In this document: piece by piece, positions 12,540 through 36,121 of the stretch | Position numbering within the stretch: position 1 is the stretch's first letter | Layout: each line of letters begins with the position of its first letter | Virus record (IMG/VR): IMGVR_UViG_3300047476_002078 | Location: 248,001 to 312,000 of that record | Reading direction: 5' to 3' (one strand) | DNA length: 64,000 bases | The notes under the pieces: generated by a model | What the model saw: only the letters and a program-made list of their open reading frames with translations | The model's database searches: none | What the model was told of the DNA's origin: nothing | Translations under genes and position numbers: made by a program

Positions 12540-12986
12540 ATGTCTGATAAAAAAAGCGTTAAAGAAAGAAAGTTACAACGCAGAGAAATAGAGAAAAATT
12601 TAAAGCAATACCGTAAATCAGAAATAGTTGATATGCTTTGTGGGGTATTAGACTTACCCAGAGATAAAATACTAGATGTATGTAATGCTTTAACCGATCT
12701 TTTAATTGAATTATCTTTCACAGAGGCTATTGTGCATTTTCCTAAATTTGGGAAATTTGTATTTGAGCCTTTATCAAAAAGAAAAATTTGGAATCCTAAA
12801 GAAAAAAAGTCGTTAGTTTACCAAAATCCCAAAATGACTTTTAAGCCTTCACACAAATTACGGAGCATGTTACGGAAACAATATCGTCGTAATAGTTATC
12901 AACTTGCAGAATTGAATAAAATTTCTGATACTAAACATAAACAGCCAACAAGCTGGTCAAAAATAACTGAGGAAAAAGAGGGATGA
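12540..12986 (+). CDS. HU/IHF-like DNA-binding protein with terminal extensions
   Basis: VHFPKFGKF.....KRKIWNP......KMTFKPSHKLR matches the HU arm signature. Confidence 0.75.
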   Translation: MSDKKSVKERKLQRREIEKNLKQYRKSEIVDMLCGVLDLPRDKILDVCNALTDLLIELSFTEAIVHFPKFGKFVFEPLSKRKIWNPKEKKSLVYQNPKMTFKPSHKLRSMLRKQYRRNSYQLAELNKISDTKHKQPTSWSKITEEKEG

Positions 12987-15355
12987 GCGTGAACAAGCAG
13001 GATATTATTTTAGCAGATGAACTCCCACTTATGCCTGTAAGAGATATGGTTATGTTTCCTAACATGATTGTACCTTTTTTTGTAGGCAGAGAAGAGTCTC
13101 TTAAAGCAATTGATTATGCGGCTAGAAATACTCAAAATTTGATGATTTTAGCTAGTCAAAAAGATGTTAATTTAGACAAACCTTCTAAAAATGATATTTA
13201 CCCCATAGCTGTTGCAGCTTTAATTATCAAAACAAAACAAGTCCCAGATGGAAGAATTAAGATATTAACTCAAGGGCTACATAAAGTTCGTATTTTAGAG
13301 TGGAAAGCGGAAGCTCCTTACGTAGTAAAATATGAAATCGTTGATGATTTTATAAGCGAATTAAAGACAGAACATAAAGCTCTCATGGGTTTAGTAAAAG
13401 ATAACCTTGAGCAATTAGTTACTATTGGTAAATTCGCTTATCCTGAAATAGTACAAATTTTAGAAGAACAAGAAGACCCCGGAAAATTAGCGGATTTAAT
13501 TTCTGCAAACTTGTCTCTAAAATTGACAGAAAGTTATTCTATTTTATCAGAACTTGACCCTATCAAAAGACTCGAAAAGGTTAATAAAACTTTAGTTCAA
13601 GAAATTGAAATATACAGATTACAACAAAAAATAAAAACCAATACTAAAGAAGAAGTTACTAAATCACAAAGAGAATACTTTCTTCGAGAACAGCTTCAAT
13701 CTATTCGTAAAGAGCTAGGTGAAAACGAAGATAAAGAAGGTTACAGTAAAAAAATTAAAGATGCTAAAATGCCAGAAGAGGCTCAAAAAGAAGCATTAAA
13801 ACAAGCAAAAAGATTAGACAGTCTCAGCCCAGAGTCTAGCGAAGCTTCAATAATTAAACACTATCTTGATTGGATGGTAGAGCTTCCTTGGGCAGTATCT
13901 ACTCAAGACAACTTAGACATTAAAAATGCTCGAAAAGTTCTTGATGAAGATCATTTTGGTCTTGATGATGTTAAAGAAAGGATTCTGGAATTCTTATCAA
14001 TCAAAAAATTGAACCCTGATAGTAAAGGCTCAATTCTGTGCCTTGTCGGTCCTCCGGGCGTAGGTAAAACAAGTATCTGTAGAAGTGTTGCCAAAAGTAT
14101 GAACAGAAAATATATCCGTTCATCTCTTGGTGGAGTAAGGGATGAGGCTGAGATCAGAGGGCACAGAAGAACTTATATAGGTTCCATGCCCGGAAAAGTC
14201 ATTCAAGGAATTAAACAAGCTGGTTCAAATAACCCTGTTTTTGTTTTGGATGAAATTGATAAATTGGGAAGAGATTTTAGAGGCGACCCTTCTTCCGCTT
14301 TACTGGAAGTTTTAGACCCAGAACAAAATAAAGATTTCAAAGACCACTATATCAATGTTGCTTTTGATGTCAGTAAAGCTTTTTTTATTGCTACAGCTAA
14401 CAGCCTAGATACAATTCCGGGTCCTTTATTAGACCGTATGGAAGTTATTAATGTAAGTGGCTATACTGAATCAGAAAAAGCTGAAATTTGTCGTAAATAC
14501 CTTCTTCCGAAGCATCAATTAGAGAGCGGATTAGGTGACATGAAATTAGAATTTGACCCTTTTGCTATCCGCAAGATGATTCAGGGCTACACTCGTGAAA
14601 ACGGTCTTAGAAATCTTGAGCGTCTTGTAAATAGAGTTTTCCGTAAAATTGCTCTACTTGTAACAGAAGACAAGATTAAAGTTTCAGAAAAATTGAATAT
14701 TACGGAAGATTCAATTACAAAATATCTGGGAGCACCAAAATACCTAACAGATGAGATGAGAAATTCTGACTTAGTAGGTGTTTGCACAGGTCTTGCTTAT
14801 ACTTCTGTTGGAGGAGTCACTTTAGAACTGGAAGCTATCCTTGTGCCTGAAAAAGACTTTAATTTAAAAGTTTCGGGTAATTTAGCTCAAGTTATGAAGG
14901 AATCTTCTGACATTTCATTCTCCGTTGTAAAATCTCGTGCAGATAAATTCGGTATTAAACTAGAAGATTTCAAAAACACTGGAATACATTTACATGCTTT
15001 AAATGGAGCCGTGCCAAAAGATGGTCCATCCGCAGGTATTACTATGGCAACGGTATTAACAAGTTTATTGTCAAGTAAGCCTGTTAGAAAAGACGTGTCT
15101 ATGACAGGAGAATTAACTCTTACTGGAAGAGTGCTGGCTATCGGTGGAGTTAAAGAAAAGCTAATAGCGGCTGCACGTCATGGGTGTAAGACTGTAATTA
15201 TACCTAAAGATAATGAAAAAGATTTGGAAGAAGTACCAGAAGAAATTAAAAAACTTATCCAGATCGTACCTGTAACAACTATTGAAGAAGTTATAGACAT
15301 TGCTTTAGTTAAAGAAGCTAAATCTTCTAAAAAGAAAAAAGAGAAAATTGCATGA
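12983..15355 (+). CDS. lon: ATP-dependent Lon protease (LonA)
   Basis: LPLMPVRD N-domain, GPPGVGKT, RGHRRTYIGSMPG, LDEIDK, PKDGPSAG (Ser), GGVKEK (Lys). Confidence 0.97.
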   Translation: MSVNKQDIILADELPLMPVRDMVMFPNMIVPFFVGREESLKAIDYAARNTQNLMILASQKDVNLDKPSKNDIYPIAVAALIIKTKQVPDGRIKILTQGLHKVRILEWKAEAPYVVKYEIVDDFISELKTEHKALMGLVKDNLEQLVTIGKFAYPEIVQILEEQEDPGKLADLISANLSLKLTESYSILSELDPIKRLEKVNKTLVQEIEIYRLQQKIKTNTKEEVTKSQREYFLREQLQSIRKELGENEDKEGYSKKIKDAKMPEEAQKEALKQAKRLDSLSPESSEASIIKHYLDWMVELPWAVSTQDNLDIKNARKVLDEDHFGLDDVKERILEFLSIKKLNPDSKGSILCLVGPPGVGKTSICRSVAKSMNRKYIRSSLGGVRDEAEIRGHRRTYIGSMPGKVIQGIKQAGSNNPVFVLDEIDKLGRDFRGDPSSALLEVLDPEQNKDFKDHYINVAFDVSKAFFIATANSLDTIPGPLLDRMEVINVSGYTESEKAEICRKYLLPKHQLESGLGDMKLEFDPFAIRKMIQGYTRENGLRNLERLVNRVFRKIALLVTEDKIKVSEKLNITEDSITKYLGAPKYLTDEMRNSDLVGVCTGLAYTSVGGVTLELEAILVPEKDFNLKVSGNLAQVMKESSDISFSVVKSRADKFGIKLEDFKNTGIHLHALNGAVPKDGPSAGITMATVLTSLLSSKPVRKDVSMTGELTLTGRVLAIGGVKEKLIAAARHGCKTVIIPKDNEKDLEEVPEEIKKLIQIVPVTTIEEVIDIALVKEAKSSKKKKEKIA

Positions 15356-16260
15356 GTATGAATATCGTAAAAGAAAAAATCAGTGATGAAGATGCAGTTG
15401 TTATTAAGAAATTAAATAAACCTGTTAAAACTACAATCATTGATAAATCTTTACGTATAGATGAAGATGAAGATATTTCGTCATTAAATACGAAAACTTC
15501 ATCTTCAAGCTCATCTCGACCTGTCAGTTCAAGAGAAGAAAAAGCACCTCCAAAAAAGAAGTTACTTGGTAATGCTGGACCTAATCCAGACGGGACTATT
15601 GATTGGGACAAAAATCCGGACTGTGTGGATTTTATAATTCAGTATCACGAATCAAGCGGTAATTCTAATGACGAGGAAGGTTATTTAAAAACTGGAAATA
15701 AGTGTTTTAGGCAATTTAACAAGATGTTTTCCACTAAAGCTAAAGCAGTTAATGTTAATCCTGAAGATATACAAAAAGGTCTAGTGGATTTTTATGAATC
15801 TGAATCCGACTTTAAATATACAAAAAAAGATGTTGTAGAAGAATATGAAGATGAAAGAACTGAGGGTTTAACAACACAAGAAATTATTGAAAAAGAAATA
15901 CCTAATACTAAATCCCCAAAAGTTCAAAATGAAGAATACTATCCAATAAATAGAAAAACTATATCAATTGTTGAAGATAAAAAAGTTTTGTTAAAAGGAA
16001 ATAAATTAGAAATTTGCAAAATTTTAGGTTGTAAAAATATCTGTATAGTAGCAAGAAATGAAGGTAAAATAGAAGAAAATGGATTCTTCCATGCAGCTTG
16101 TTCTAATAGTGAAAATGGGCAGATTTTAGAAGGTTGCCCACAACTTCAAGAGTTTTCAGGTAAAGAAAAAATAGCCTTTGAAATGTTTAAACAACAATTC
16201 CAAGGAGACGAATTAAAAGCTAAAAAATTTCTGTTGCTGACGAGAACTTTGTACAAGTAA
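15352..16260 (+). CDS. Hypothetical protein with low-complexity N-terminus and Cys-rich C-terminus
   Basis: ATGA-coupled to lon; CKILGCKNIC...HAAC...GCPQ. Confidence 0.65.
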   Translation: MSMNIVKEKISDEDAVVIKKLNKPVKTTIIDKSLRIDEDEDISSLNTKTSSSSSSRPVSSREEKAPPKKKLLGNAGPNPDGTIDWDKNPDCVDFIIQYHESSGNSNDEEGYLKTGNKCFRQFNKMFSTKAKAVNVNPEDIQKGLVDFYESESDFKYTKKDVVEEYEDERTEGLTTQEIIEKEIPNTKSPKVQNEEYYPINRKTISIVEDKKVLLKGNKLEICKILGCKNICIVARNEGKIEENGFFHAACSNSENGQILEGCPQLQEFSGKEKIAFEMFKQQFQGDELKAKKFLLLTRTLYK

Positions 16261-16272
16261 TGGAATATAAAA

Positions 16273-17262
16273 ATGATTGTTAATTGGGGAATCCCGTTAT
16301 TCAAATCAGTATTAATAAATTTTGATTTTTCGTTCAATTCATTTAATTGTGATGGTAAGTTAGTAAAATATAACGGTAATTTAAGTTCTCTCAACGGAAA
16401 TATTTTTGTATCTAAAGAAGATTTTTCCAGAATAGTGATTGATTTTTACAAGAGTTTATATCCTATTGCTTCAAACGATAAAATAAAAGATTTGTACTTA
16501 CTAATTTCTGATTTCATATCACTTGCTTTCCCAATACAGGGAGACATTCAAATTGATAAAAATTTAGTTTTAAATTTTTGGAACTCTCGATTATCAGAAT
16601 CCGAAATAGAAAATATTATTCATAATTCAAAACCTCAATTTATTGATAAAGATAACCTACCATTTGAACATTATTTTGCAGACTACTTAGGAAAAAAAGA
16701 AAAATCTTTGCACTTTGATAAACTATTATCAAAATCTCAGGACTTGGGAACAAGTTTCATGCTTTTCATGCTTACTGTTTGCTTCCGTACAATTTTGGGT
16801 GGAGTATATACCGCACCTTTTATAAATGATAATAATCTGTCTCGTTTTTTCCCCCGATATAAAGGTATGCCAAACAAAGAGTTAATAAAAAATTTAAGTT
16901 TTATTCATGATGAAAAAATACCGTTTATTTATACCAACTATTTAGATAGCAGTAAAATTGTTGAATACATATTTGATAAATACGACCACTCCTTAATAAA
17001 AGAAATGTGGGTAAATATATTGTATGAAAGAATTCCAGAAGTAGTTTCCCCTTACGAGCCAAAACAATTTTTGGGGGATTTGTTTGATAATTTAAAAGAT
17101 ATTGTTATTACAAAAAATTGGGAAAAATTTATTGATGATAAAACTTTAGGTCTTGAATGGGTTGTTTGTTTTAATAATTCTCCAGAGCTTTCAGTAAGAT
17201 ACAAGAGATCATTTGTTAAATATTTTTCAAACCAAGATGACTATTCGGTTTTTGTATTATGA
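16273..17262 (+). CDS. Uncharacterised paralog family member A
   Basis: FVSKEDF..IV..FYKSLYP and LPFEHYFADY, shared with 17259 and 31332. Confidence 0.75.
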   Translation: MIVNWGIPLFKSVLINFDFSFNSFNCDGKLVKYNGNLSSLNGNIFVSKEDFSRIVIDFYKSLYPIASNDKIKDLYLLISDFISLAFPIQGDIQIDKNLVLNFWNSRLSESEIENIIHNSKPQFIDKDNLPFEHYFADYLGKKEKSLHFDKLLSKSQDLGTSFMLFMLTVCFRTILGGVYTAPFINDNNLSRFFPRYKGMPNKELIKNLSFIHDEKIPFIYTNYLDSSKIVEYIFDKYDHSLIKEMWVNILYERIPEVVSPYEPKQFLGDLFDNLKDIVITKNWEKFIDDKTLGLEWVVCFNNSPELSVRYKRSFVKYFSNQDDYSVFVL

Positions 17263-18176
17263 ATTTGACAGAAAAAACAAAATTAAACATTTCTTTAAAT
17301 AAAATAACTCTTTTTTGTGTTGATGAAAAATACATAACAAATGAAGGGGAAGTGTTTTCATTTGATGAGTTTATAAGATCAGAAAAGGAATATTTCGTCT
17401 CACCTGAAGATTTCAGTATTATAATTTCAAAGTATTTAATATCCTTGTATCCTGACAAAAGTGTTGAAACTATTTTTGAGAAAATTTGTGATTATATCAA
17501 AATAAACGGTTCTATATTTAATAGAGACTTTCTTAGCATTGATTTTAAATTCAAATATTATAATCCTGAAAAAATAGAAAATTTTGAACCTTCTTTTGAA
17601 TTTTTGTATGGTGATTACTTGGCAGGAAATATAAACAGTAAATTTATAGAAAAATGTAGAAAGCTTTGTTATGACCATTTTTTATATATGACTATAGGTT
17701 CTTTCAACGCCATATTTACATCTTCTTTTGGATTAAGAGATTCCGTTCCTGACGCTTTAGAAAATTTATTTGATTTTGAAAATTCAAAATCTGTTTTGGA
17801 TTTATTAAAAAAACCATATTTTGACATTCTTTGGGATATTAAAGTGCCTATTGAATTCGATGGTAAAGATTCTGAAACAACCTCTGAATATTTGTTAAAA
17901 AATTTAGGTAAAGAAAAAATAAAAGAATTTTGGAATATATTACTATCCAAAAGAATCCCTGCTTATTTATACAGAAATTATGATAAAGACTTCACTAATA
18001 AAATGTTTAAAGAGAGATTGGATGCTATAGAAAGTCAAAATTTTGAACCTTTTATAAATAGCGAAACTGGTTTAATTTTTAGCGTTTTATATTCAAATGT
18101 TCCTTATTTCAGGAATTCTTATAACAGAGGTCTTATAACTTTCTTTAAGGAATCTGATTCAATTTGGCGGCTTTAG
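17259..18176 (+). CDS. Uncharacterised paralog family member B
   Basis: FVSPEDF..II..YLISLYP and PSFEFLYGDY. Confidence 0.75.
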   Translation: MNLTEKTKLNISLNKITLFCVDEKYITNEGEVFSFDEFIRSEKEYFVSPEDFSIIISKYLISLYPDKSVETIFEKICDYIKINGSIFNRDFLSIDFKFKYYNPEKIENFEPSFEFLYGDYLAGNINSKFIEKCRKLCYDHFLYMTIGSFNAIFTSSFGLRDSVPDALENLFDFENSKSVLDLLKKPYFDILWDIKVPIEFDGKDSETTSEYLLKNLGKEKIKEFWNILLSKRIPAYLYRNYDKDFTNKMFKERLDAIESQNFEPFINSETGLIFSVLYSNVPYFRNSYNRGLITFFKESDSIWRL

Positions 18177-18804
18177 TAGAAAACATTACGTGAGGCTTAT
18201 TCTTACTATGTAAGCTAGGGTCAACATACCCAAAGTGACACATTACTGTATATCTTTCTTTGTCACAAACCAATGGATTAACTTTGTGTTTAAATATGGG
18301 ATTAAGATTATTAACACAAACCAAAGTACCGTGTTGAGGCAGTATAGTATTAAGTGTAAATATTTTTTCAGAAGATTCTATTCCAACGCTCAAATATCCG
18401 CCGTCAGTTATAGTATATGTATCCTGTGTTAGATAAAGCATAGTTGTCATAAAAGAACCGTCAAGATAATCAGAGTGCCATGCCATACCTTCTCCATTTT
18501 TAAATTTATTGGACATTGGAAGACCTTGACTAAAATCTCCAAAATTTTTTATGAAAAAAGAAAAATACTCACTGGAGGATAAATAATTCCAGTAATAATG
18601 AAACAAAGAAGGTTGGGTATCTTTTTCCCAATGTAAAACCAAAGGGTCTTTCCAACCGTACTTTTCTTGATTAGCTTTTACAAAATTTTCTCCTCTAATT
18701 ATTTGTAGCAGGTCATCACAAAAATTTTTATCGACGGAAGAAATCACGTAACCATCTTTAAAAAATTGATTCAAATCAAAATGCGTATTATTAACTATTT
18801 CCAT
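18145..18804 (-). CDS. 2OG-Fe(II) oxygenase (prolyl-hydroxylase-like)
   Basis: WHSD...GGYL...HKV...RYT (HxD...H...R). Confidence 0.85.
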   Translation of the reverse strand: MEIVNNTHFDLNQFFKDGYVISSVDKNFCDDLLQIIRGENFVKANQEKYGWKDPLVLHWEKDTQPSLFHYYWNYLSSSEYFSFFIKNFGDFSQGLPMSNKFKNGEGMAWHSDYLDGSFMTTMLYLTQDTYTITDGGYLSVGIESSEKIFTLNTILPQHGTLVCVNNLNPIFKHKVNPLVCDKERYTVMCHFGYVDPSLHSKNKPHVMFSTKAAKLNQIP

Positions 18805-18806
18805 AA

Positions 18807-19337
18807 TCAGTATCCAGATTTACACATTAGAGAGTACCTTTTTAAAGGTAGCTTCATTTTTTCAACTTTATGAAAGAATAAAGGATTCCAATTCAATATC
18901 GAAACTAGAGTACCGTTTTCAGGCAGTATGTTTTGAATTTTATGGGCATTTTTTATAGAAAGACATCCGCCGAAAGACTCGTGCCAATTTTCATCACCTA
19001 AATAAAGTATATGATTAATGGGAAAATTGTGTGAAGCATCATTATGCCACTCTAAACCGTCACCTTGGCGATAACTATGAACGCAGAACTGCCTTTGCGA
19101 GAAATCACCGTAAATCTGAGTAAAAGGCTTCTCATATTCATTTAACATGTTTATAAAAAATTCTTGAATACTTTCTGGAACTTGAAGAGTTAAAAGCGGT
19201 GCATTGCTATCGTTATATTTTTCATTTGTATCTTGAAAGTTAAGTTTGCTAATCACTTCTAAAATTTCGCAAGGCGTTTGTATTTTTTGATAAGTAACAC
19301 CATTTTCAAATAATTCTGTGAGTTTAATTTTTAACAT
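18807..19337 (-). CDS. 2OG-Fe(II) oxygenase (prolyl-hydroxylase-like)
   Basis: WHND...LYL...GGCL...HKV...RYS. Confidence 0.85.
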   Translation of the reverse strand: MLKIKLTELFENGVTYQKIQTPCEILEVISKLNFQDTNEKYNDSNAPLLTLQVPESIQEFFINMLNEYEKPFTQIYGDFSQRQFCVHSYRQGDGLEWHNDASHNFPINHILYLGDENWHESFGGCLSIKNAHKIQNILPENGTLVSILNWNPLFFHKVEKMKLPLKRYSLMCKSGY

Positions 19338-28453: not shown

Positions 28454-28630
28454 ATGGAAGACCTATATGAGGTAAAAATTGAAGTCACTGTTCCAAAAAT
28501 TCTTAAAATTAAAGCTAAAGATGAGAACGAGGCTTTAGAAAAAGTACAGCAATTGTTAGAAGAGAAAAACATAGAGCGTACAAGAATTCAAGAAATGACT
28601 TGGAACAAAATAGAGGAAAAAAGTGAATAA
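28454..28630 (+). CDS. 58-aa protein missed by the ORF track
   Basis: GGAGG RBS; [32 protein letters not shown]...; overlaps the clpX start. Confidence 0.7.
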
Positions 28631-29804
28631 GAACGCACAATCTTCTTGCTCTTTTTGTGGAAGCAAAACCCAATTGCTTGGGCTTTCTCCACAAATACTT
28701 ATATGTAAAAACTGTAGTGAGAAAATTTCCGGCTACTTTAAAGAAAATAATCAAGAAGAGGTCACATTCAATTTTGATCTGACTCCCCTTCAAATAAAAA
28801 CACATTTAGATGATTTTGTTATTGGTCAAGATCAAGCCAAGATAGAGTTAGCTACGGCAGTCTATTACCATTACAAAAGAATCAATGATAAAGATTCAGA
28901 AAATCTGGTAGAAAAAAGCAATATTCTTCTTTTGGGTCCGACTGGAGTGGGAAAGACTGCTCTATGTAAAGCATTAGCTAAATGCTTAAATGTGCCTTTT
29001 GCAATAGCGGATGCAACTAATCTTACTCAAGCAGGATACGTAGGTGATGATGTCGAAAATATACTTTATTACTTACTTCAAAATGCGGATGGAAGTGTAG
29101 CAAAAGCTGAAAAGGGTATAGTTTATATTGATGAAATAGACAAAATTGCGTCCAAAACTCAAAACGTGAGCCTTACAAGAGATGTTAGTGGTGAGGGAGT
29201 TCAACAAGCTTTACTTAAAATAATCGAAGGAACAATTGCAAAAATACCTCCAAAAGGAGGGAGAAAGCATCCAGACCAAGAATGTATTCAAATTAACACT
29301 GAAAATATTTTGTTTATAGTTGGAGGAGCTTTTGTAGGATTAACAGATATTATTGAGAGACGAACAAATAAAAAACGTATAGGTCTATCTAGTCAAACAT
29401 TTGACGATTTTGAAACTTTAAAAGATGTAACTCAAGAAGATTTAATATCTTATGGTTTTATTCCAGAATTTATCGGAAGATTGCCAAATATTGCAACGCT
29501 TCAAAATTTGACAGTGAGTGATTTAGTAAGCATAATCACCAAACCAAAAAATTGTATTTTATCGCAGTATAAAAAACAGTTCAACTACAATGGAGTTGAA
29601 TTAGAGATTACAGGCGAAGCTTTGAATAAAATCGCTGAAAGAGCCTTATCAAAGAATACAGGAGCAAGAGGTTTAAGGGCAGAGTTTGAGGTAGTTTTAA
29701 AAGATTATTTGTATGAAGCTCCAAATAAGACATTTGAAAAAGTAATAGTTGGAGATAATTTAGAAGTATGTGTAAAAAAAGAATATAAAGAAGCAGCGAA
29801 TTAA
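28623..29804 (+). CDS. clpX: ClpX AAA+ unfoldase
   Basis: CSFCG...[68 protein letters not shown]. Confidence 0.95.
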
Positions 29805-29815
29805 ACGGGGGATTA

Positions 29816-30304
29816 ATGCTACATAACGTGATGATGAATCTAGTGGTTATAAAAGAAGATAACCCCGGAAAATATTCAATTTTGCTTCATGATCCAGATG
29901 GACTCGGATGGAGACTCCCAAGTGGAGACGTTTTAGAAGTAGAGGATGAGGATGAACTTCCAGAACCTAACTCAATTTATTCTATTTCGTGTTTTCATCA
30001 CTTACAAAGTTTATGTAATTTAAGTCCTGAAGTTATAGAAGATTTTGATATTTTACCTTATTCCCACATACGGTCTTTTAGCCCAGAATTAGAAGTCCCA
30101 GAGTTAATCCTTGTTTACTGGGCGATTATAGATTCTGAAAAATTAGATTTAGTTTATGAACAGTTAAAATCCAAAAACGGTAATGCTCGATTTTTCCCTT
30201 ATATGGATGAAGCTGGAAACTGCACCTTACCTGAATTAAATATAATTGAAGATGAGCAGTCTATTATCGGTGTCATGAATAATTTTTATAAAAAGGTAAA
30301 TTAA
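29816..30304 (+). CDS. Degenerate Nudix-fold-like protein
   Basis: ILL......WRLPSG.V precedes the expected Nudix box, but REUxEE is absent. Confidence 0.35.
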   Translation: MLHNVMMNLVVIKEDNPGKYSILLHDPDGLGWRLPSGDVLEVEDEDELPEPNSIYSISCFHHLQSLCNLSPEVIEDFDILPYSHIRSFSPELEVPELILVYWAIIDSEKLDLVYEQLKSKNGNARFFPYMDEAGNCTLPELNIIEDEQSIIGVMNNFYKKVN

Positions 30305-30864
30305 TGCAACAAGGTATTGAAAAAGATTTAGAAGTTTCCTTAGAATGGACTCCTAATCCCAAGACTTTAAAATTAGTTGTAAATAAAACACTTTTAAGCA
30401 AAGGTATCAGTAATTCAAAAAGTTTACAAGAAGCTTCCGAAAAATCACCTTTGGCAGAAAAATTATTTTCTATTGATGGTGTTAAAGGTGTAATGATTGC
30501 AAAAGATTTTATTACTGTAACAATTGAAGGTTACGAAGTTTATGAAATTTACGACAGAATTAAATCTTGTATTATAGAAGTCATTAACTCAGGTTCCGAA
30601 TTAGTTTACGCATTTTTTAATAAAAAGGAACTTACTGGCATTGAACTTGAGATTGATACTATTTTACAAACTCATATCAAACCTGCGGTAGCAAAAGATG
30701 GAGGAGACATTAATTTTGAGAGCTTTGAAGACGGTGTGGTATATGTATCTCTTCACGGTTCTTGCAACGGTTGTCCTAGCTCTAAAATAACTTTAAAAAA
30801 CGGAGTCGAAACTCTTTTAAAAGAAAAAATACTCTCTGTTAAAGAAGTCGTATCTATAAGCTAA
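30304..30864 (+). CDS. nfuA: NfuA/NFU1 Fe-S cluster carrier
   Basis: TPNP.TLK, SPLAEKLF.IDGV, KDGGDI, GSCNGCPSS.ITLK.GVE. Confidence 0.92.
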   Translation: MQQGIEKDLEVSLEWTPNPKTLKLVVNKTLLSKGISNSKSLQEASEKSPLAEKLFSIDGVKGVMIAKDFITVTIEGYEVYEIYDRIKSCIIEVINSGSELVYAFFNKKELTGIELEIDTILQTHIKPAVAKDGGDINFESFEDGVVYVSLHGSCNGCPSSKITLKNGVETLLKEKILSVKEVVSIS

Positions 30865-31368
30865 ATGGCAAAATTAGAATTAGATCAAGTAGCTTTGTTA
30901 GATTTTAAAGAAATCATTCCTAATCTTTGTTTGCAATTAAAAACAAAAAGAAATGGTAAGTTATTATCTATTTTAAATTCAATAAAAATAGACGGGCATA
31001 AGTTTAAGTTTGTTTATAATGAAAACTCTTTTTATAAAATTTATGTTAAGTGCCCCAAGTGTAAAGAGCCTAAATTAAAACTCTACAAATTAGATGATGT
31101 TTATTGGTGTAGTTCCTGCCATAGAGTTGTTAAGAAGAAAAATAAAAGACGTTCAACAGTTTACTCCAAGTATGTCAGACCTTTAAAACTACTAAAAGAA
31201 ATCGAAGATGCTCTATTTACCGATAATATAACTGAAGGCAAGAGACGAAAATTGGAAATAAAAGCTGAAAAATTAAGAAAAATCATACCGATATATATCT
31301 ATGAACTAAGAGAAAAAGTCTTAAAAAGTATTCAGAAAGATAAAGATATTGGATTATCTGACAAATAA
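30865..31368 (+). CDS. Basic Zn-ribbon protein (possible DNA binder)
   Basis: CPKC.....KLY......CSSCH. Confidence 0.65.
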   Translation: MAKLELDQVALLDFKEIIPNLCLQLKTKRNGKLLSILNSIKIDGHKFKFVYNENSFYKIYVKCPKCKEPKLKLYKLDDVYWCSSCHRVVKKKNKRRSTVYSKYVRPLKLLKEIEDALFTDNITEGKRRKLEIKAEKLRKIIPIYIYELREKVLKSIQKDKDIGLSDK

Positions 31369-32411
31369 TTTAATAGGAAAAAGTTAATTCTTCTTCTATG
31401 TGACGACATCTGCATCACACTTTCAATCCATTCTTTATTATCAATAAGAGACTCAAAATCTCTATCCTTTATAATCCTTAATTTATTTTTAATTTGCTTA
31501 TCTCGAATGAGATTTTTAATACAGTCGTTTATGGTACTATTGTTTATATTTAAAAATTCGATATTGTATTTAGGTAAACTTCCGCTTAAAGGCATTGCTA
31601 AAATAATATTTCCGCTTATCCCACGATTAATATCTGATTCAAAAGTTTTAACATACAGTTCCGAAATGTGGTCTATTCCGTAAATTTCAATTATTTTATA
31701 AACATCTTCATCTGTGTCACAGTTAAATACTAATGGGTCAAAGATAAAAGGGTAAGATTTTTTAAACATTTCTCTCAGAGATTCTTTTTCTGATTTAAAA
31801 AGTTTTTCGTGTGGATAAGTGATGAAAAAGTTTTTAATTTCTCTCAGCATTTCTTTCATTTCTTTTAACGCTATTTTTTCGATGTCTTTTATCAAAGATT
31901 GATAAGTTTTGGGTTTTTTAAAAAACTTATAGTCGCCGTAACGAATTTCAAAAGGAAGAAATTCTACCATCTCTTCCTTAATTAAATTATTGTCTGCTAT
32001 CTGGTAAATAACCTCAAATTCTTGCTTACTGAATTCTATGTTGATATTTTCAATTAAGAATAGTTTATCAAATGTTAAGTCACATATTTTGTAAATTATT
32101 TCCTTATTTTGGTTAGGGTAAAGGCTTTTAAAGAAAGAAACGATTAAGTATTTAAAGTCTTTTATTTCGCAATATATGACAGACGGTCTATCACTATGAT
32201 AGCAAAAAAAATCATTAAAAAATAACTCAAGACTCGAATTATAATTGCTTGATATTAGCGTATGTAGATTTGAAGACTTTGAGATATATCTTGAATTTTG
32301 ATCTAATGTTATTTTAGTTGATAGTATTATTGCATCTGAGAATAATAAATGTTGTTTACTAAAATTTGTATCCAAATCTAAATATTTGTTTTTAAATAAT
32401 TGAAAAATCAT
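31332..32411 (-). CDS. Uncharacterised paralog family member C
   Basis: IYCEIKDF..LI.SFFKSLYP and LPFEIRYGDY. Confidence 0.75.
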   Translation of the reverse strand: MIFQLFKNKYLDLDTNFSKQHLLFSDAIILSTKITLDQNSRYISKSSNLHTLISSNYNSSLELFFNDFFCYHSDRPSVIYCEIKDFKYLIVSFFKSLYPNQNKEIIYKICDLTFDKLFLIENINIEFSKQEFEVIYQIADNNLIKEEMVEFLPFEIRYGDYKFFKKPKTYQSLIKDIEKIALKEMKEMLREIKNFFITYPHEKLFKSEKESLREMFKKSYPFIFDPLVFNCDTDEDVYKIIEIYGIDHISELYVKTFESDINRGISGNIILAMPLSGSLPKYNIEFLNINNSTINDCIKNLIRDKQIKNKLRIIKDRDFESLIDNKEWIESVMQMSSHRRRINFFLLNYLSDNPISLSF

Positions 32412-32944
32412 GAATCGTACTTATCCAATTTTGGATACCTTGGTAGTAGCATAGTTAAGAACTCTTTATCTTCTTTAAAATTAGGGGACTTGATTGCGAC
32501 AAACTTTTTATATCTAAGAATAGTGAATCCTAAATTATCTTTTGAAAAAGACTGTCTTCCTAAAAAATAATTATAAACTTCTACAGAATCGGGAATATTA
32601 AAACATTTAGCTTTTACATAAAAATTTTCTAGTCCTTCTGAACACAAAAAGCTTGTGAGGTATGAAGAACTTAAAGAAGAGATTGCTTGGATATTTCCGT
32701 CTAGCCACTGTTGAGTGTTAGGCTTCCAAAAGTCGCAGAATAAAAAACTAACTTCATTTCCTTGAGTAAAACCCATCTGAAGGTTTGGAACAAAATTAGC
32801 AAAATTAACTAGAGAATTGAGATGTTTTTCAAGATCGACGTTTGGGTAAATTTTCATTCTTAATATAGCGTAACATCTTCTAGCCAAATAAAAATCTGAT
32901 CTACCTTCGTACTGCTCTTTCATTCTTTTATTCAAATCTTTCAT
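32408..32944 (-). CDS. Thg1-like (tRNAHis guanylyltransferase) homolog lacking catalytic Asp residues
   Basis: L..RMK.YE....YL.RR...I.R, GFTQGNEVS, W..GNIQ..S, FNIP...EV.NYF..RQ; RxDG is RMKI and SDE is GNE. Confidence 0.7.
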   Translation of the reverse strand: MKDLNKRMKEQYEGRSDFYLARRCYAILRMKIYPNVDLEKHLNSLVNFANFVPNLQMGFTQGNEVSFLFCDFWKPNTQQWLDGNIQAISSLSSSYLTSFLCSEGLENFYVKAKCFNIPDSVEVYNYFLGRQSFSKDNLGFTILRYKKFVAIKSPNFKEDKEFLTMLLPRYPKLDKYDS

Positions 32945-32973: not shown

Positions 32974-33597
32974 ATGGTATTAGATTTACATTCACTGTTT
33001 TCTAAGGGATTTGCTGTAACAAAAGTAGATAACGTAGATTATTTGTTACATAGCATTAAAAATGATGTTTTCGACGATCATTCTGGCATATATTCAAATA
33101 ACGCTCCGCCAAAAGTAGTCGATTGGTCTTACACAGAAAAAGTTCCAGACCTTGTTAAAAATTTTTGGAGCAATTTAGCGTTAGATTCTTATTTTAATCT
33201 GTTTCGTTTAAATTATGGTGATTTCACCCATCTAAAAATGAGTGCTCACAAATATGAAAAGAACCATGAATTGCTTTGGCATCACGATTTTCATGAGGCT
33301 TGCCCAATAAATAATATTTTATATTTATCTGATACTGAAGTTTCAGAAGACCATGGCTCTTTACTTAAAATAGGAAAGTGGAAAATAGATAGAAACGGTT
33401 GGGGTAAGTCCCATGAAGTTGAAATTTTAGACACTATAATTCCATATCACGGTACTTTGGTAACTTTAATGAACTTTAATCCTATCTTTTGTCATTCAGT
33501 AACGCCTTTTTTAGGAAATTATGGAAGGTATTCGTTAATTTGTAGAATGGGTTACACGGAAAATATAGAAAACAGTAAGATTTCAAAATTCATGTAA
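32974..33597 (+). CDS. 2OG-Fe(II) oxygenase (paralog of 18145 and 18807)
   Basis: WHHD...ILYL...PYHGTLV..MNFNPIF.HSV...RYSL. Confidence 0.85.
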   Translation: MVLDLHSLFSKGFAVTKVDNVDYLLHSIKNDVFDDHSGIYSNNAPPKVVDWSYTEKVPDLVKNFWSNLALDSYFNLFRLNYGDFTHLKMSAHKYEKNHELLWHHDFHEACPINNILYLSDTEVSEDHGSLLKIGKWKIDRNGWGKSHEVEILDTIIPYHGTLVTLMNFNPIFCHSVTPFLGNYGRYSLICRMGYTENIENSKISKFM

Positions 33598-33849
33598 TTC
33601 AATACATAGTATTTTTGAGTTTGATATTGATAATATTTCAACTTCTGACAAGCTAGTGTATTGTGAGATGTCTCCGCACCCTTCCGTGAGTATTTGGTTA
33701 TCGAAAAGAATCGAACCGCTTTGCAAATAATATGTCTCTTTTTTAATGTTTAATTTTATGGATTTACCTTGTAAAATATCAATTATTCTAGTTGTGCATT
33801 GATTGGTTTTATCAACAATTGTTTCTAATCCCCATTCATGTTTATTCAT
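33583..33849 (-). CDS. Degenerate cupin (MPI-like)
   Basis: K.EWG.E....I.I..GK.....KKETYYLQSG; metal-binding His absent. Confidence 0.45.
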   Translation of the reverse strand: MNKHEWGLETIVDKTNQCTTRIIDILQGKSIKLNIKKETYYLQSGSILFDNQILTEGCGDISQYTSLSEVEILSISNSKILCIELHEF

Positions 33850-34179: not shown

Positions 34180-34739
34180 TGGCACTTTCAAACTTAATAC
34201 AACGTGACGTATATTTTCTTAAAAAGGGTGACACTATAACAGTATTAGTTAATGAAGAACTAGCTGAAAACGGATGGGCTGGAGGTCATTACTTTTCTTA
34301 TACTGACTCAATAGTTGTCGATGGTCATGTAGTGCCTGTTGTAAGAAGAGGAAACGGCATCCAAAGAGGTCCGTTTGCAATGTATGGTTCCGATGAGCCT
34401 GAAGATAAATCAATGTCTTATACAGGTCAGCATTTGAAGTATAAATATGCTCAAACAGTATATGGCAATACGCATTTCTTAACACGTATTTTTGAGACTA
34501 ATTCTTATTTTGATAGGACTGGGTTAGACACTCTTACTGACTATCATTCAGTTTCACACGACGTATTAAACCCGACATCTTTTTCATTGCAATATAAGGC
34601 AGGAAACCCTTTATACATTTCAGAAAGAGGTTTTTTAACCACTGAAAAAATAACAGAGGCGAATGAAGTAGTAGCTTATATTTTTCAAGAACCTAAAGAA
34701 GAAAATTCATTGTTTTTAGGCGTAGCTAATATTTCTTAA
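34179..34739 (+). CDS. Putative head decoration protein (third paralog)
   Basis: IFET...GNPLYISERGFLTT resembles IFET...GDKLYSSQNGLLTT of 53526..54056. Confidence 0.55.
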   Translation: MALSNLIQRDVYFLKKGDTITVLVNEELAENGWAGGHYFSYTDSIVVDGHVVPVVRRGNGIQRGPFAMYGSDEPEDKSMSYTGQHLKYKYAQTVYGNTHFLTRIFETNSYFDRTGLDTLTDYHSVSHDVLNPTSFSLQYKAGNPLYISERGFLTTEKITEANEVVAYIFQEPKEENSLFLGVANIS

Positions 34740-36121
34740 TAAACAATATCTTCAAAAGTAACTGTTCTTCCCTTTTCTAAAGGGTAGTTTCTATTTGTTG
34801 GTTTATCCGCTGTAATTATAGGGGAAGAATTACCAACTCTCTCAGATCGAGAGTTCCAAGGGTCTATAGGTGACTCAACAGATTGATTAAGATTTGTATT
34901 GTTACCTTCTATTCCAACTGAATAAACAATGTCTCCTGCGTCTAATTGTTGCAGAGTAAACATTTGCTGAAATATTGCACCTCTTTGACCAACATAATTT
35001 ATACTACCTACAGAAAATCTTTCTCCTGAAGGTCTAACAATTATATCTCTCTTATTCAACATAGGTGAAGGACCTGTCCAAGTCTCCCAAGTGTAATTAA
35101 CTCTAATACCGATCTCAGTTAATTCTACATTTTTTTCAGCGTCAGGAGGGGCAATAATTACATCGAAAGGACCTTCATATCCACCAACTATGTTAGTACC
35201 GTAACAAATGGGGCAATCTGAAGGAGAATTTTGGTGAACGTCAGAAAAATCATCACAAAGTTGACCATTCCATTTTCTGATAAAAACTTTAACTCTTTCT
35301 CCGCCTTGTTCAAGAATCCAACGGTTTCTTCTTACAGCTTCCTTCCACATCCAATCCGTTTTTTCTTGTTCGTGTAAATTTACAGATTTGCAGAATTCCA
35401 ATTCAGATTCTACTAGCTGACCTTGCGAATTTATCCCTACCGTGGTCAATTTATAAAAAATTCTATTGTGAAGATTCGCTCTTATTCTATTACTGTTTAT
35501 GTAATAGCTGACAGTTAAAGCTCCTGCATTATTTAACGGTAATCTTGGAGGGATTAATTTTTCTGTAGCTGGGTCTAATATTTGCTGGCTGATTAGAGTT
35601 ATCTCTCCAGTTAATGCTGATATTTTATGTATCGGAACCTCTAACAACCCGTTCCCATCTCCGTTATCAACTCTAACAATCACGTCTTTTATTTCAGCTA
35701 GATTGCCTTCATAAAGAGACTTTCCTTGATCTTCTATATTTTTCACAATTGGGAAAAATTTGGTCTTAAAACGCCACTCTTTTTGAGGATTGATGCCTCT
35801 TTCTAAATTTTGAACTTCTTCATTAGTTATAAGGCTATTTGTGGTTTTATCACGATACACTCCGCTACTTAAAGGTTCTGAATTAACCTTGTGGTACGGA
35901 CCTGCTTCAGAATCAAAACTTCTATATAAATTAACTCCAAGGATGGAAAAAGCAGTATTTTCGGGAAGTATGCTAGGGTTGTCCCATCTAACGTCTAATA
36001 CTCCGTTTAAATAAGGTGAAATCACAAAAACATTAATTGGAGGCTTTGGTAATAACGAGGAAGGCTTCCTTTCCGGAATTTCAAATGGTTTATTAGTTTG
36101 GTAAACTTGGTTGAATTTCAT
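34736..36121 (-). CDS. Putative neck/head-closure protein with an FN3-like N-terminus
   Basis: P.PP.NV...V.W......GVNLYRS; GGERVKVFIRK..G..C.....CPICYGT..VGGY. Confidence 0.5.
   Translation of the reverse strand: MKFNQVYQTNKPFEIPERKPSSLLPKPPINVFVISPYLNGVLDVRWDNPSILPENTAFSILGVNLYRSFDSEAGPYHKVNSEPLSSGVYRDKTTNSLITNEEVQNLERGINPQKEWRFKTKFFPIVKNIEDQGKSLYEGNLAEIKDVIVRVDNGDGNGLLEVPIHKISALTGEITLISQQILDPATEKLIPPRLPLNNAGALTVSYYINSNRIRANLHNRIFYKLTTVGINSQGQLVESELEFCKSVNLHEQEKTDWMWKEAVRRNRWILEQGGERVKVFIRKWNGQLCDDFSDVHQNSPSDCPICYGTNIVGGYEGPFDVIIAPPDAEKNVELTEIGIRVNYTWETWTGPSPMLNKRDIIVRPSGERFSVGSINYVGQRGAIFQQMFTLQQLDAGDIVYSVGIEGNNTNLNQSVESPIDPWNSRSERVGNSSPIITADKPTNRNYPLEKGRTVTFEDIVY

What the first reader, a model, noticed from the sequence alone, without database searches (positions are those of the whole stretch)
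16273..19337. Island 1 of an unexplained module: two unknown paralogs convergent with two 2OG-Fe(II) oxygenases
Seen: 16273 and 17259 are paralogs (FVS.EDF..I......SLYP; [LP][PS]FE..[FY][AG]DY; IKE.W..L..RIP). They overlap tail-to-tail with two paralogous oxygenases sharing WHxD and P..GTLV...N.NP.F.HKV...RY. The same pairing recurs at 31.3-33.6 kb, giving three of each family. Inference: a dedicated hydroxylase + partner (substrate or specificity factor) system for modifying proteins, peptides or nucleic acids. From memory, similar families accompany phage radical-SAM clusters; no radical SAM gene is in this window.
Basis: partly seen in the sequence, partly recalled or inferred. Interest (0 to 1): 0.75.

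Follow-up and report, generated by a model that had tools for sequence, protein, structure and literature searches.

The report
Phage prolyl-hydroxylase paralogs with partner family
A 356-kb freshwater jumbo phage carries 14 copies of a prolyl-hydroxylase-type oxygenase and five copies of a previously undescribed helical protein that sit next to them far more often than chance allows, which points to an uncharacterised phage protein-modification system whose chemistry is still untested.

Summary
All six ORFs exist at the stated coordinates, and both paralogies are real.

- **Oxygenases.** They are PHD/P4H-type 2OG-Fe(II) enzymes. The HxD...H...R site is intact, and the nearest solved structures are PHD2, Tpa1, OGFOD1 and P4H.
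- **No 1:1 module.** The window lies in a complete 355,874-bp jumbo phage. That genome holds 14 oxygenase paralogs in 9 loci and 5 members of the unknown "U" family in 4 loci.
- **Linkage.** Every U locus lies within 3.1 kb of an oxygenase (permutation P about 2e-4). The oxygenase convergent to the U1/U2 pair is orthologous in three diverged lineages. Other relatives (L028, L031) also keep U near oxygenases. Several (L013, L014, L016) do not.
- **U family.** It is very rare, with 18 cluster representatives among 1.84 billion. It folds confidently into a small beta domain plus a helical domain that matches no solved structure.
- **Radical SAM link.** The only remote relative is ORF069 of Ralstonia phage RSL2. 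It sits among SPASM radical-SAM and 2OG oxygenase genes. The orthologous four-gene radical-SAM cluster exists in this genome, beside another oxygenase pair.
- **U3.** It is instead coupled to a degenerate Thg1-like gene.

Whether U is substrate, adaptor or merely co-located is unresolved. The complex prediction gave no verdict.

The parts
16273..17262 (+). U1, 329 aa. Member of a new helical protein family. Its stop overlaps the U2 start by 4 nt (ATGA).
   Evidence: ORF. Paralogous to U2 at E 7e-16. Orthologues at 93, 78, 45, 40 and 39% identity. No Pfam or PHROG match.
17259..18176 (+). U2, 305 aa. Tandem paralog of U1. Its 3' end overlaps the 3' end of OXY-a by 32 nt.
   Evidence: ORF. AF2 model has pLDDT 87.4 and pTM 0.85, with an N-terminal beta domain followed by an all-helical domain. 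No solved or AFDB fold match. Only phage proteins match in BFVD.
18145..18804 (-). OXY-a, 219 aa. PHD/P4H-type 2OG-Fe(II) oxygenase, convergent with U2. H110-x-D112, H173 and R184 are intact.
   Evidence: Pfam PF13640 31.6 bits, above the cut-off of 27. Invariant H110, D112, H173 and R184. AF2 pLDDT 84.7. Foldseek top hits are PHD1/2, P4H, Tpa1 and Ofd1 at E about 4e-9. Orthologous clade with the L011 and L029 copies.
18807..19337 (-). OXY-b, 176 aa. Shorter paralog of the same oxygenase family, in tandem with OXY-a.
   Evidence: BLASTP against OXY-a gives E 3e-23. Pfam PF13661 34.9 bits and PF13640 34.7 bits. WHND, FFHKV and KRYSL motifs are kept.
31332..32411 (-). U3, 359 aa. Third U-family subfamily. 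Its start overlaps the stop of the upstream Thg1-like gene by 4 nt. Its 3' end overlaps the 3' end of ORF 30865-31368 by 37 nt.
   Evidence: ORF. Family HMM E 9e-91. Orthologues are P0014 (59%) and P0017-P0021.
32408..32944 (-). Degenerate Thg1-like protein, 178 aa, co-transcribed upstream of U3.
   Evidence: phrog_4717 at E 9e-12. 39% identical to the gene directly upstream of the U3 orthologue in L015. That copy matches phrog_4717 at 1.6e-30 and BtTLP 4kgk at 1e-19. The catalytic SDE is SNE, and the window copy lacks about 45 internal residues.
32974..33597 (+). OXY-c, 207 aa. Oxygenase paralog, divergent from the Thg1-like/U3 operon across a 29-nt spacer.
   Evidence: BLASTP against OXY-a gives E 4e-30. 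WHHD, FCHSV and GRYSL motifs are kept. Pfam 22 bits, below the cut-off on its own.

Best explanation
The two islands are visible parts of a dispersed multigene system in a 356-kb freshwater jumbo phage.

Component 1 is a 14-copy family of prolyl-hydroxylase-type (PHD/P4H/OGFOD1-like) 2OG-Fe(II) oxygenases. At least 12 of the 14 keep the full Fe(II)/2OG site.

Component 2 is a five-member family of 250-360-aa proteins, here called the U family. They have a new fold: a small N-terminal beta domain followed by a helical domain. The conserved motifs are SLYP, LPFExxYADY, an invariant Asp, and RxP.

Shown:
- U genes are non-randomly placed beside oxygenase paralogs.
- U1 and U2 are translationally coupled.
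- The oxygenase convergent to the U1/U2 pair (the OXY-a clade) has stayed with that pair through deep divergence.

Inferred:
- U1 and U2 act together, probably as a heteromer.
- The adjacent oxygenase uses Fe(II), 2-oxoglutarate and O2 to hydroxylate a protein side chain, most likely proline.
- The U proteins are its cognate protein partner, either the substrate itself or the subunit that presents the substrate. I put substrate and adaptor at roughly equal odds.
- The system belongs to a wider phage-encoded protein-modification toolkit. That toolkit also includes four SPASM-type radical-SAM enzymes and an Nfu Fe-S scaffold.
- U3 has been recruited to a different partner, a catalytically degenerate Thg1-like protein.
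For: Oxygenase identity:
- Pfam 2OG-FeII_Oxy_3/4.
- The paralog profile hits OGFOD1 and Tpa1 at E about 4e-7.
- The AF2 model (pLDDT 84.7) matches PHD1/2, P4H, Tpa1, Ofd1 and PPHD at probability 1.0, TM 0.6-0.69.
- H, D, H and R are invariant in the alignment.

Family sizes: 14 OXY in 9 loci and 5 U in 4 loci.

Linkage inside the genome:
- U-to-OXY distances are 0, 0, 563 and 3071 bp.
- Permutation gives P = 1.7e-4 by gene order and 2.4e-4 by base pairs.

Linkage in relatives:
- L011: U2-like and OXY convergent and overlapping, followed by U1-like.
- L029: U2-like, U1-like, HNH, then a convergent OXY, plus a second OXY 2 kb away.
- L028: three tandem OXY genes 2.5 kb from a U3-like gene.
- L031, found by searching with OXY: its only U gene lies about 2 kb from an OXY pair.
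- OXY-a, the L011 copy and L029_6310 form one clade, with support 95/89 and 82/77.

Other points:
- The 4-nt U1/U2 start-stop overlap is kept in the window, L013, L014, L016, L029 and the 345-kb relative.
- U4 overlaps a catalytically dead OXY paralog (H to Y, H to R, R to L), as expected if binding rather than turnover is retained there.
- Radical-SAM connection: RSL2 ORF069 is a remote U homologue (HMM E 2.9e-9, hhalign 92.7%, BFVD probability 1.0). It sits among SPASM radical-SAM genes and two 2OG oxygenases. Orthologues of that cluster lie next to an OXY pair in this genome.
- An Nfu scaffold gene lies at window 30304-30864.
Against: - No biochemical or interaction evidence exists. The U1+U2+OXY-a complex prediction gave no verdict.
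- Five of nine OXY loci have no U gene.
- The U1/U2 pair persists with no OXY within 5 kb in L013, L014, L016 and two loci of a 345-kb relative. The convergent ORFs there are not oxygenases.
- OXY is the most abundant gene family in the genome. If both families are confined to plastic accessory regions, chance proximity is more likely than the uniform permutation assumes.
- Adjacency in paralogous or orthologous loci is partly inherited, so the counts are not independent.
- Some PHD-fold enzymes act on free amino acids (PolD and HalA are among the top hits), so a protein substrate is not certain.
- The U family keeps conserved acidic residues (E, D, D). It could therefore be an enzyme in its own right.
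Confidence: 0.45

Rival explanations
1. Co-location without direct coupling. OXY and U are two fast-evolving accessory multigene families that accumulate in the same plastic islands of jumbo-phage genomes, which are hot spots visited by homing endonucleases. They act on unrelated targets, for example oxygenases on host proteins or metabolites and U proteins in host takeover or anti-defence.
For: - OXY is the largest paralog family, and five of nine OXY loci lack U.
- U pairs occur without OXY in L013, L014, L016 and the 345-kb relative.
- An HNH gene sits between the U pair and OXY in L029, and an HNH/homing endonuclease is in the window at 55557-57392.
- The island genes are the only minus-strand genes in a long plus-strand block, and their 3' ends overlap their neighbours, as inserted cassettes would.
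- L028 carries an Acb5-like anti-defence gene nearby.
Against: - All four U loci lie within 3.1 kb of OXY (P about 2e-4).
- The same OXY clade stays convergent to the U1/U2 pair in three lineages, down to about 31% OXY identity.
- Independent contigs L028 and L031 repeat the proximity.
- A dead OXY copy is retained overlapping U4.
Confidence: 0.3
2. Joint radical-SAM/2OG maturation pathway. U proteins are scaffold or recognition subunits (RRE-like), or large precursor proteins, of a RiPP-like or protein-crosslinking pathway. SPASM radical-SAM enzymes and 2OG oxygenases would act in sequence, as in the YhhB/YhhC-type cyclophane systems. In this genome the pathway genes have become dispersed.
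For: - In RSL2 the U homologue ORF069 lies between SPASM radical-SAM genes ORF067 and ORF072, with ORF075 and ORF077 (radical SAM) and ORF076 and ORF080 (2OG oxygenases) following.
- This genome keeps orthologues of all four radical-SAM genes (41-53% identity) beside an OXY pair.
- The best NCBIfam matches are peptide or protein maturases: PapB, DynA, DarE, CbpB and anSME.
- OXY-a has a weak hit to the YhhC 2OG maturase.
- An Nfu scaffold is in the window.
Against: - In this genome the radical-SAM cluster holds no U gene, and it lies 85-100 kb from the window islands.
- All NCBIfam scores are far below the curated cut-offs. The YhhC hit is 16 bits against a cut-off of 150.
- Only one cultured lineage (RSL2 and its close kin) shows the clustered state.
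- No short precursor peptide gene was identified.
Confidence: 0.15
3. Nucleic-acid or tRNA modification or repair. U proteins would be nucleic-acid-binding or nucleotide-binding domains (HEPN or KNTase_C-like helical bundles) that work with nucleotidyltransferases (Thg1-like) and with oxygenases acting on bases or RNA.
For: - A Thg1-like gene is translationally coupled to U3 in two lineages.
- Several weak structural hits of U2 residues 112-282 are to HEPN or nucleotidyltransferase substrate-binding domains, at Z 4-5.
- Neighbours in relatives include dNK, thymidylate synthase, DHFR, Ro60/TROVE and DNA methyltransferases.
Against: - The OXY fold and profile are closest to protein prolyl hydroxylases. 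No AlkB or TET/JBP entry is among the 50 best structural hits listed.
- The Thg1-like proteins lack two of the three metal-binding carboxylates.
- Z of 5.5 or less is below what the tool considers meaningful for helical bundles, and no Rx4-6H motif is conserved.
- The nucleotide-metabolism neighbours are ordinary early-region phage genes.
Confidence: 0.1

Closest known systems
Protein prolyl hydroxylases of the PHD/P4H/PKHD class: EGLN/PHD2, OGFOD1/Tpa1/Ofd1, Pseudomonas PPHD and Dictyostelium PhyA
   Same: Double-stranded beta-helix fold, the HxD...H iron triad and the 2OG-binding Arg. These are the best structural hits (TM 0.6-0.69) and the best profile hits (OGFOD1/Tpa1, E about 4e-7). From general knowledge, these enzymes each hydroxylate one defined protein: HIF, ribosomal uS12, EF-Tu or Skp1.
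   Different: Only 15-19% identity. The phage proteins are minimal single-domain enzymes of 176-249 aa. They are expanded to 14 paralogs in one phage genome and match no PHROG family. The substrate is unknown and activity is untested.
Ralstonia phage RSL2 ORF067-ORF081 cluster (U homologue = ORF069, phrog_36207, function unknown)
   Same: It contains a remote U-family homologue, four SPASM-type radical-SAM genes that are 41-53% identical to this genome's four, an ORF070-like and an ORF081-like gene, and 2OG oxygenases.
   Different: In RSL2 everything is in one 12-kb co-directional cluster with a single U gene. Here the U genes are dispersed, expanded to five, and sit by P4H-type oxygenases rather than by the radical-SAM genes. 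No gene of the RSL2 cluster is annotated with a function in that record.
Radical-SAM/SPASM plus 2OG-oxygenase RiPP maturation pairs (YhhB/YhhC type)
   Same: The same two enzyme classes are co-encoded. There are weak NCBIfam hits of the radical-SAM proteins to YhhB, PapB and DynA, and of OXY-a to YhhC.
   Different: All scores are far below the family cut-offs. No short precursor peptide was identified. The candidate partner is a folded protein of about 300 aa, not a leader-core peptide.
Multi-copy 2OG-Fe(II) oxygenase genes of marine cyanophages and the chlorovirus PBCV-1 prolyl 4-hydroxylase (from general knowledge, not tested here)
   Same: Viral genomes carrying several P4H-superfamily oxygenases of unknown or protein-directed function.
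   Different: The window's three copies match no PHROG family at E<=0.01. No conserved partner family has, to my knowledge, been reported for the cyanophage copies.
Thg1 / Thg1-like proteins (BtTLP, PDB 4kgk)
   Same: The gene upstream of U3 and its L015 orthologue are sequence homologues (phrog_4717; 4kgk at E 1e-19).
   Different: The SDE metal-binding motif is SNE, and the first catalytic Asp region is not conserved. The window copy has a deletion of about 45 residues. It is probably not an active 3'-5' nucleotidyltransferase.

Membership tests
2OG-Fe(II) oxygenase superfamily, prolyl-hydroxylase (PF13640/PF13661) branch | Double-stranded beta-helix (jelly-roll) core | tested here: met
   The AF2 model of OXY-a has pLDDT 84.7 and eight core strands. 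Foldseek gives probability 1.0 to PHD2, P4H and Tpa1, TM 0.6-0.69.
2OG-Fe(II) oxygenase superfamily, prolyl-hydroxylase (PF13640/PF13661) branch | HxD...H iron-binding facial triad | tested here: met
   H110, D112 and H173 are invariant in alignment A4 and present in all three window copies. Of the 14 genome copies, g207848 has lost both His, and the second His of g100839 falls in an alignment gap.
2OG-Fe(II) oxygenase superfamily, prolyl-hydroxylase (PF13640/PF13661) branch | Basic residue binding the 2OG C5 carboxylate | tested here: met
   R184 is invariant (RY[ST]L motif). It is lost only in the dead copy g207848.
2OG-Fe(II) oxygenase superfamily, prolyl-hydroxylase (PF13640/PF13661) branch | Pfam gathering score reached | tested here: met
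   OXY-a scores 31.6 bits and OXY-b 34.7/34.9 bits against a cut-off of 27. OXY-c scores 22.0/22.5 bits and is below the cut-off on its own, but it is a clear paralog.
2OG-Fe(II) oxygenase superfamily, prolyl-hydroxylase (PF13640/PF13661) branch | Prolyl (or other residue) hydroxylase activity on a protein | not testable with these tools
   This needs an enzyme assay or mass spectrometry.
Thg1 / Thg1-like tRNA 3'-5' nucleotidyltransferases | Sequence membership (Pfam PF04446 / phrog_4717) | tested here: inconclusive
   The window copy scores 16.1 bits in Pfam against a cut-off of 29.2, but matches phrog_4717 at 9e-12. Its L015 orthologue matches phrog_4717 at 1.6e-30 and PDB 4kgk at 1e-19.
Thg1 / Thg1-like tRNA 3'-5' nucleotidyltransferases | Three metal-binding carboxylates (RxDG Asp and the SDE pair) | tested here: not met
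   SDE of BtTLP aligns to SNE, and the window copy has GNE. The alignment starts after the RxDG region, and no DG motif is visible in the N-terminus.
HEPN / KNTase_C helical substrate-binding domains (considered for the U family) | Four-helix up-down bundle with significant structural similarity | tested here: inconclusive
   VIA-align Z is 4.0-5.0 to 1jog, 8xdj, 1wwp, 5yep and 2hsb. This is below the level the tool regards as meaningful for helical proteins.
HEPN / KNTase_C helical substrate-binding domains (considered for the U family) | Rx4-6H catalytic motif | tested here: not met
   No conserved Arg...His pair exists. The nearly invariant residues are Y64, F113, E114, D119, D193 and Y216 in U2 numbering.
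aGPT-Pplase and other Pfam families (considered for the U family) | Any Pfam-A match | tested here: not met
   None of the 22 family members gives a consistent Pfam hit at E<=1. The three window members gave no PHROG hit.
RSL2-type phrog_36207 family (U homologue) | Detectable homology over most of the length | tested here: met
   The family HMM gives E 2.9e-9. hhalign gives 92.7% over 292 columns and aligns the PFE motif. BFVD gives probability 1.0 and TM 0.55. Direct BLAST finds nothing, so the window proteins are remote relatives rather than members of that PHROG.
Radical SAM / SPASM maturases (genome cluster outside the window) | Radical_SAM domain above the Pfam cut-off and a SPASM auxiliary-cluster domain | tested here: inconclusive
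   In the genome search, PF04055 is above the cut-off in three of four genes. The SPASM model TIGR04085 scores 20.3-20.8 bits, below its cut-off of 27. The RSL2 orthologue scores 30.2 bits and passes.

The most novel reading that the evidence does not exclude
Jumbo phages from freshwater lineages to the phiKZ-related RSL2 group would share a previously unrecognised protein post-translational modification system. In it, a new-fold protein family (U) is the dedicated target or targeting subunit of phage-encoded prolyl-hydroxylase-type oxygenases and SPASM radical-SAM enzymes. Paralog-specific enzyme-partner pairs would have diversified inside single genomes, including a pseudo-enzyme/partner pair and a pseudo-Thg1/partner pair.
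Probability: 0.25. Interest if true: 0.8.

Novelty: new variant of a known kind. Interest (0 to 1): 0.6.

Why it matters
Phage 2OG-Fe(II) oxygenases are among the most common viral 'auxiliary' genes, and hardly any has a known substrate. This genome offers a concrete, testable candidate: a small set of folded proteins that stay next to specific oxygenase paralogs across diverged phages.

If the U proteins are substrates or adaptors, three things would follow:
- It would give the first handle on what expanded viral prolyl-hydroxylase families do.
- It would connect them to the equally unexplained SPASM radical-SAM clusters of jumbo phages.
- It would add a new protein fold with a defined biochemical context.

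If the linkage is only co-location, the result still matters. It would show that these islands are plastic accessory regions rather than an operon-like module.

Tried and rejected
**Complex prediction.** U1+U2+OXY-a scored 0.20 against a mark of 0.32, so no verdict. This is not evidence either way.

**Fold searches with the U2 model.**
- Foldseek against PDB, AFDB clusters, Swiss-Prot and the ESM Atlas gave nothing significant.
- VIA-align against 48,161 chains gave a best Z of 5.5.
- Cas1 and FadR recur at very low scores (TM below 0.2). I do not regard them as leads.

**Sequence searches for the U family.**
- The protein-atlas searches for U1 and U3 were uninformative.
- Pfam on all 22 family members and PHROGs on the three window members gave no match.
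- tblastn of U2 and U3 against 50,697 GenBank phages found no match.
- The search for related loci with the 7-sequence U alignment in IMG/VR found none.

**Specific ideas tested and rejected.**
- The ORFs convergent to U2-like genes in L013 and L014 are not cryptic oxygenases (hhalign probability below 1%; no Pfam or PHROG match).
- RSL2 ORF068 is not Thg1-like.
- The partial gene upstream of the U3-like gene in L017 is not Thg1-like.

**Other.**
- Promoter and terminator scans of both islands gave no more sites than shuffled sequence.
- Literature searches found no description of the U family or of this oxygenase/partner linkage. They found only generic annotation of radical-SAM genes in RSL2-related phages (PMC5468394) and of Fe-S gene sets in marine viral genomes (PMC5332604).
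- A genome-wide hhalign scan timed out and was replaced by an HMM search.

Full report
**1. Where the window lies.** The window is bases 248,001-312,000 of a single 355,874-bp virus record. The record has direct terminal repeats and an estimated completeness of 100%, with 34% G+C. The same sequence is held by several freshwater and lake metagenomes from 2016 to 2025.

The surrounding genes are typical of a jumbo-phage replication and host-takeover region:
- ribonucleotide reductase, NAD-dependent ligase and helicases;
- Lon protease (12983-15355), RuvC-like, RecA, a ClpX-like ATPase (28623-29804) and an Nfu/NifU Fe-S scaffold (30304-30864).

No tRNA genes are present.

**2. The observation.** All six ORFs exist at the stated coordinates.
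- U1 (16273-17262) and U2 (17259-18176) are full-length paralogs (E 7e-16). Stop and start overlap by 4 nt.
- U3 (31332-32411, minus strand) is only weakly similar pairwise (E 2e-4). Family profiles join it firmly to the others.
- The three oxygenases are clear paralogs (E 3e-23 and 4e-30) and match Pfam 2OG-FeII_Oxy_3/4.
- The tail-to-tail overlap is real for U2 and OXY-a only, at 32 nt.
- Island 2 is arranged differently. U3 is preceded on the same strand by an overlapping 178-aa gene, and OXY-c diverges from that gene across 29 nt.

**3. The oxygenases.**
- A profile of the paralogs finds OGFOD1 and Tpa1, the ribosomal uS12 prolyl hydroxylases, as the nearest solved proteins (E about 4e-7).
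- The AF2 model of OXY-a (pLDDT 84.7) is closest to PHD1/PHD2, Phytophthora and Pseudomonas P4H, Tpa1, Ofd1 and Dictyostelium PHD (probability 1.0, TM 0.6-0.69). Two small-molecule enzymes, PolD and HalA, are also among the top hits.
- The iron triad H110-x-D112...H173 and the 2OG-binding R184 are invariant.
- None of the three window copies matches a PHROG family.

Genome-wide there are 14 paralogs in nine loci. This is the largest gene family in the genome. At least 12 of the 14 keep the full catalytic set. One copy (genome 207848-208504) has lost both His and the Arg.

**4. The U family.**
- It is very rare. A word-based search of 5.8 billion proteins gave three hits. An exhaustive profile search of 1.84 billion cluster representatives gave 18.
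- The hits fall into three old orthologous subfamilies: U1-like, U2-like and U3-like.
- Wider profiles reveal two more members in this genome: U4 (208488-209366, E 4.8e-10) and a truncated U5 (31083-31832, E 1.5e-9).
- U2 folds confidently (pLDDT 87.4, pTM 0.85) into a small N-terminal beta domain followed by an all-helical domain.
- No solved structure, AFDB cluster, Swiss-Prot model or Atlas cluster matches it. No Pfam family is hit by any of 22 members.
- The nearly invariant residues are Y64, F113, E114, D119, D193 and Y216, within the motifs SLYP, LPFExxYADY, D-x-K-I-P and R-x-P.

**5. Is U linked to the oxygenases?**

Inside the genome, the four U loci lie 0, 0, 563 and 3071 bp from an oxygenase paralog. 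Random placement reproduces this with P = 1.7e-4 by gene order and 2.4e-4 by base pairs.

In relatives that keep the linkage:
- L011 (182-kb contig, U about 45% identical): U2-like and an OXY-a orthologue (59% identical) are convergent and overlapping, followed by U1-like.
- L029: U2-like, U1-like, an HNH gene, then a convergent oxygenase, with another oxygenase 2 kb upstream.
- L028: three tandem oxygenases 2.5 kb from a U3-like gene. They are orthologous to this genome's four-gene tandem cluster.
- L031: a 78-kb IMG/VR contig found by searching with the oxygenase. It has a single U gene, and that gene lies about 2 kb from an oxygenase pair.

A maximum-likelihood tree places OXY-a, the L011 copy and the L029 convergent copy in one clade, with support 95/89 and 82/77. 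The same oxygenase lineage has therefore stayed with the U1/U2 pair.

Against an obligate link:
- Five of nine oxygenase loci here have no U gene.
- L013, L014, L016 and two loci of a 345-kb relative keep the translationally coupled U pair with no oxygenase within 5 kb.
- The convergent ORFs there are not oxygenases.

The permutation assumes uniform placement. Some of the adjacency is inherited rather than independently maintained.

**6. The radical-SAM connection.**
- The best structural neighbours of U2 are phage proteins, led by an RSL2 protein (BFVD probability 1.0, TM 0.55).
- The family HMM finds RSL2 ORF069 (E 2.9e-9), and hhalign gives 92.7% over 292 columns.
- ORF069 lies in a co-directional cluster: ORF067 (radical SAM/SPASM), ORF068, ORF069 (U-like), ORF070, ORF071, ORF072 (radical SAM), two DHFR genes, ORF075 (radical SAM), ORF076 (2OG-FeII_Oxy_5), ORF077 (radical SAM), ORF080 (related to the OXY family) and ORF081.
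- This genome holds orthologues of all four radical-SAM genes (41-53% identity), plus ORF070-like and ORF081-like genes, at 175.3-181.5 kb. That cluster is directly beside the oxygenase pair at 173.5-175.0 kb and next to a DnaJ gene.
- The best NCBIfam matches are peptide or protein maturases (PapB, DynA, DarE, CbpB, anSME). All are far below the curated cut-offs.

**7. U3 and the Thg1-like gene.**
- The 178-aa gene overlapping the U3 start matches phrog_4717, tRNA-His guanylyltransferase (E 9e-12).
- An independent contig (L015) has the same pair: Thg1-like then U3-like. The two Thg1-like proteins are 39% identical.
- The L015 copy aligns to the Bacillus Thg1-like protein 4kgk (E 1e-19). However, SNE replaces the metal-binding SDE, and the first catalytic Asp region is not conserved.
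- The window copy additionally lacks about 45 residues.
- It is probably a non-catalytic derivative. Other U3-like loci (L016, L017, L028 and the 345-kb relative) lack it.

**8. Interpretation.**

Shown:
- two real, conserved protein families;
- the PHD/P4H class and intact active sites of the oxygenases;
- non-random and partly orthologous linkage of U genes to oxygenase paralogs;
- translational coupling of U1 and U2;
- a remote homologue embedded in a radical-SAM/2OG cluster.

Inferred:
- The oxygenases hydroxylate a protein.
- The U proteins are their cognate partners, either substrate or substrate-presenting subunit.

The pairing of U4 with a dead oxygenase, and of U3 with a degenerate Thg1-like protein, fits a family whose role is to be bound by enzyme-fold proteins. 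It does not prove this.

The main rival is co-location of two accessory multigene families in plastic islands. Other rivals are a joint radical-SAM/2OG maturation pathway and a nucleic-acid-directed role. The last is disfavoured by the oxygenase class and by the degenerate Thg1 site. The one available complex prediction gave no verdict.

**9. Novelty and score.** The oxygenases are new, highly expanded members of a known enzyme class. The U family is undescribed and has no recognisable fold relative outside phages. I found no report of its linkage to prolyl-hydroxylase-type oxygenases and radical-SAM clusters. I rate it a new variant of a known kind, with interest 0.6. The anatomy is solid and testable, but the mechanism is inferred.

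Noticed in passing
window 32408-32944 (-): A Thg1-like gene is translationally coupled to U3. The catalytic SDE is changed to GNE/SNE, and about 45 internal residues are missing relative to its L015 orthologue. It is probably a pseudo-enzyme. The same Thg1-like to U3 pair occurs in L015.
   Followed up: partly
G000 genome 175334-181522 (outside the window; loci L021-L025): A cluster of four SPASM-type radical-SAM genes plus ORF070-like and ORF081-like genes, orthologous to RSL2 ORF067-ORF081. It is flanked by an oxygenase pair (173525-174963), a DUF1003 gene and a DnaJ gene (182114-182962).
   Followed up: partly
G000 genome 207848-209366 (outside the window): An oxygenase paralog that has lost both iron-binding His and the 2OG-binding Arg overlaps the start of U4, a divergent U-family member, by 17 nt. 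This is a pseudo-enzyme/partner pair.
   Followed up: partly
window 30304-30864 (+), 28623-29804 (+), 12983-15355 (+): The phage encodes an Nfu/NifU Fe-S scaffold, a ClpX-like unfoldase and a full-length Lon protease close to the two islands. A DnaJ gene lies by the radical-SAM cluster. Together they make a sizeable proteostasis and Fe-S supply set.
   Followed up: partly
G000 genome 173525-174260 (-), locus L002: One oxygenase paralog has about 45 N-terminal residues of clear family homology upstream of its first ATG/GTG/TTG. It may use a non-canonical start or be 5'-truncated.
   Followed up: no
window 15352-16260 (+): A 302-aa ORF between Lon and U1, separated from U1 by a 12-nt gap. It has a Ser-rich acidic N-terminal part and a Cys-rich C-terminal part, and matches no Pfam or PHROG family. 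Whether it belongs to the U1/U2 operon is unknown.
   Followed up: no
window 18145-19337, 31332-32944, 33583-33849: From 1.7 to 34.7 kb, the island genes are the only substantial minus-strand ORFs in an otherwise plus-strand block. At 18145-18176, 31332-31368 and 33583-33597 their 3' ends overlap the 3' ends of plus-strand neighbours by 15-37 nt. No terminator-like sites were detected.
   Followed up: partly
window 55557-57870 (-); G000 34510-34902 and 101903-102706: An HNH/homing endonuclease (611 aa) sits next to a member of a three-copy family of unknown function. The other two copies of that family lie beside oxygenase loci. L029 has an HNH gene between the U pair and its oxygenase. This hints that endonuclease-associated mobility shapes these islands.
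   Followed up: no
window 39549-42491 (+) and 43317-46478 (+): Two very large ORFs (980 and 1053 aa) have no PHROG match. They are paralogous to two other genes of the genome (197303-199078 and 209432-210730).
   Followed up: no
G000 genome 347449-355872 and 10820-343295 (outside the window): Further multigene families: six tandem paralogs at the right genome end and an eight-member dispersed family. The genome is rich in expanded families besides the oxygenases.
   Followed up: no
L016 8417-10024 (-); L013 7845-11305; L028 3564-3824: Relatives carry a Ro60/TROVE homologue, a DegT aminotransferase with thymidylate-kinase-like and glycosyltransferase genes, and an Acb5-like gene within a few kb of their U genes.
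   Followed up: no
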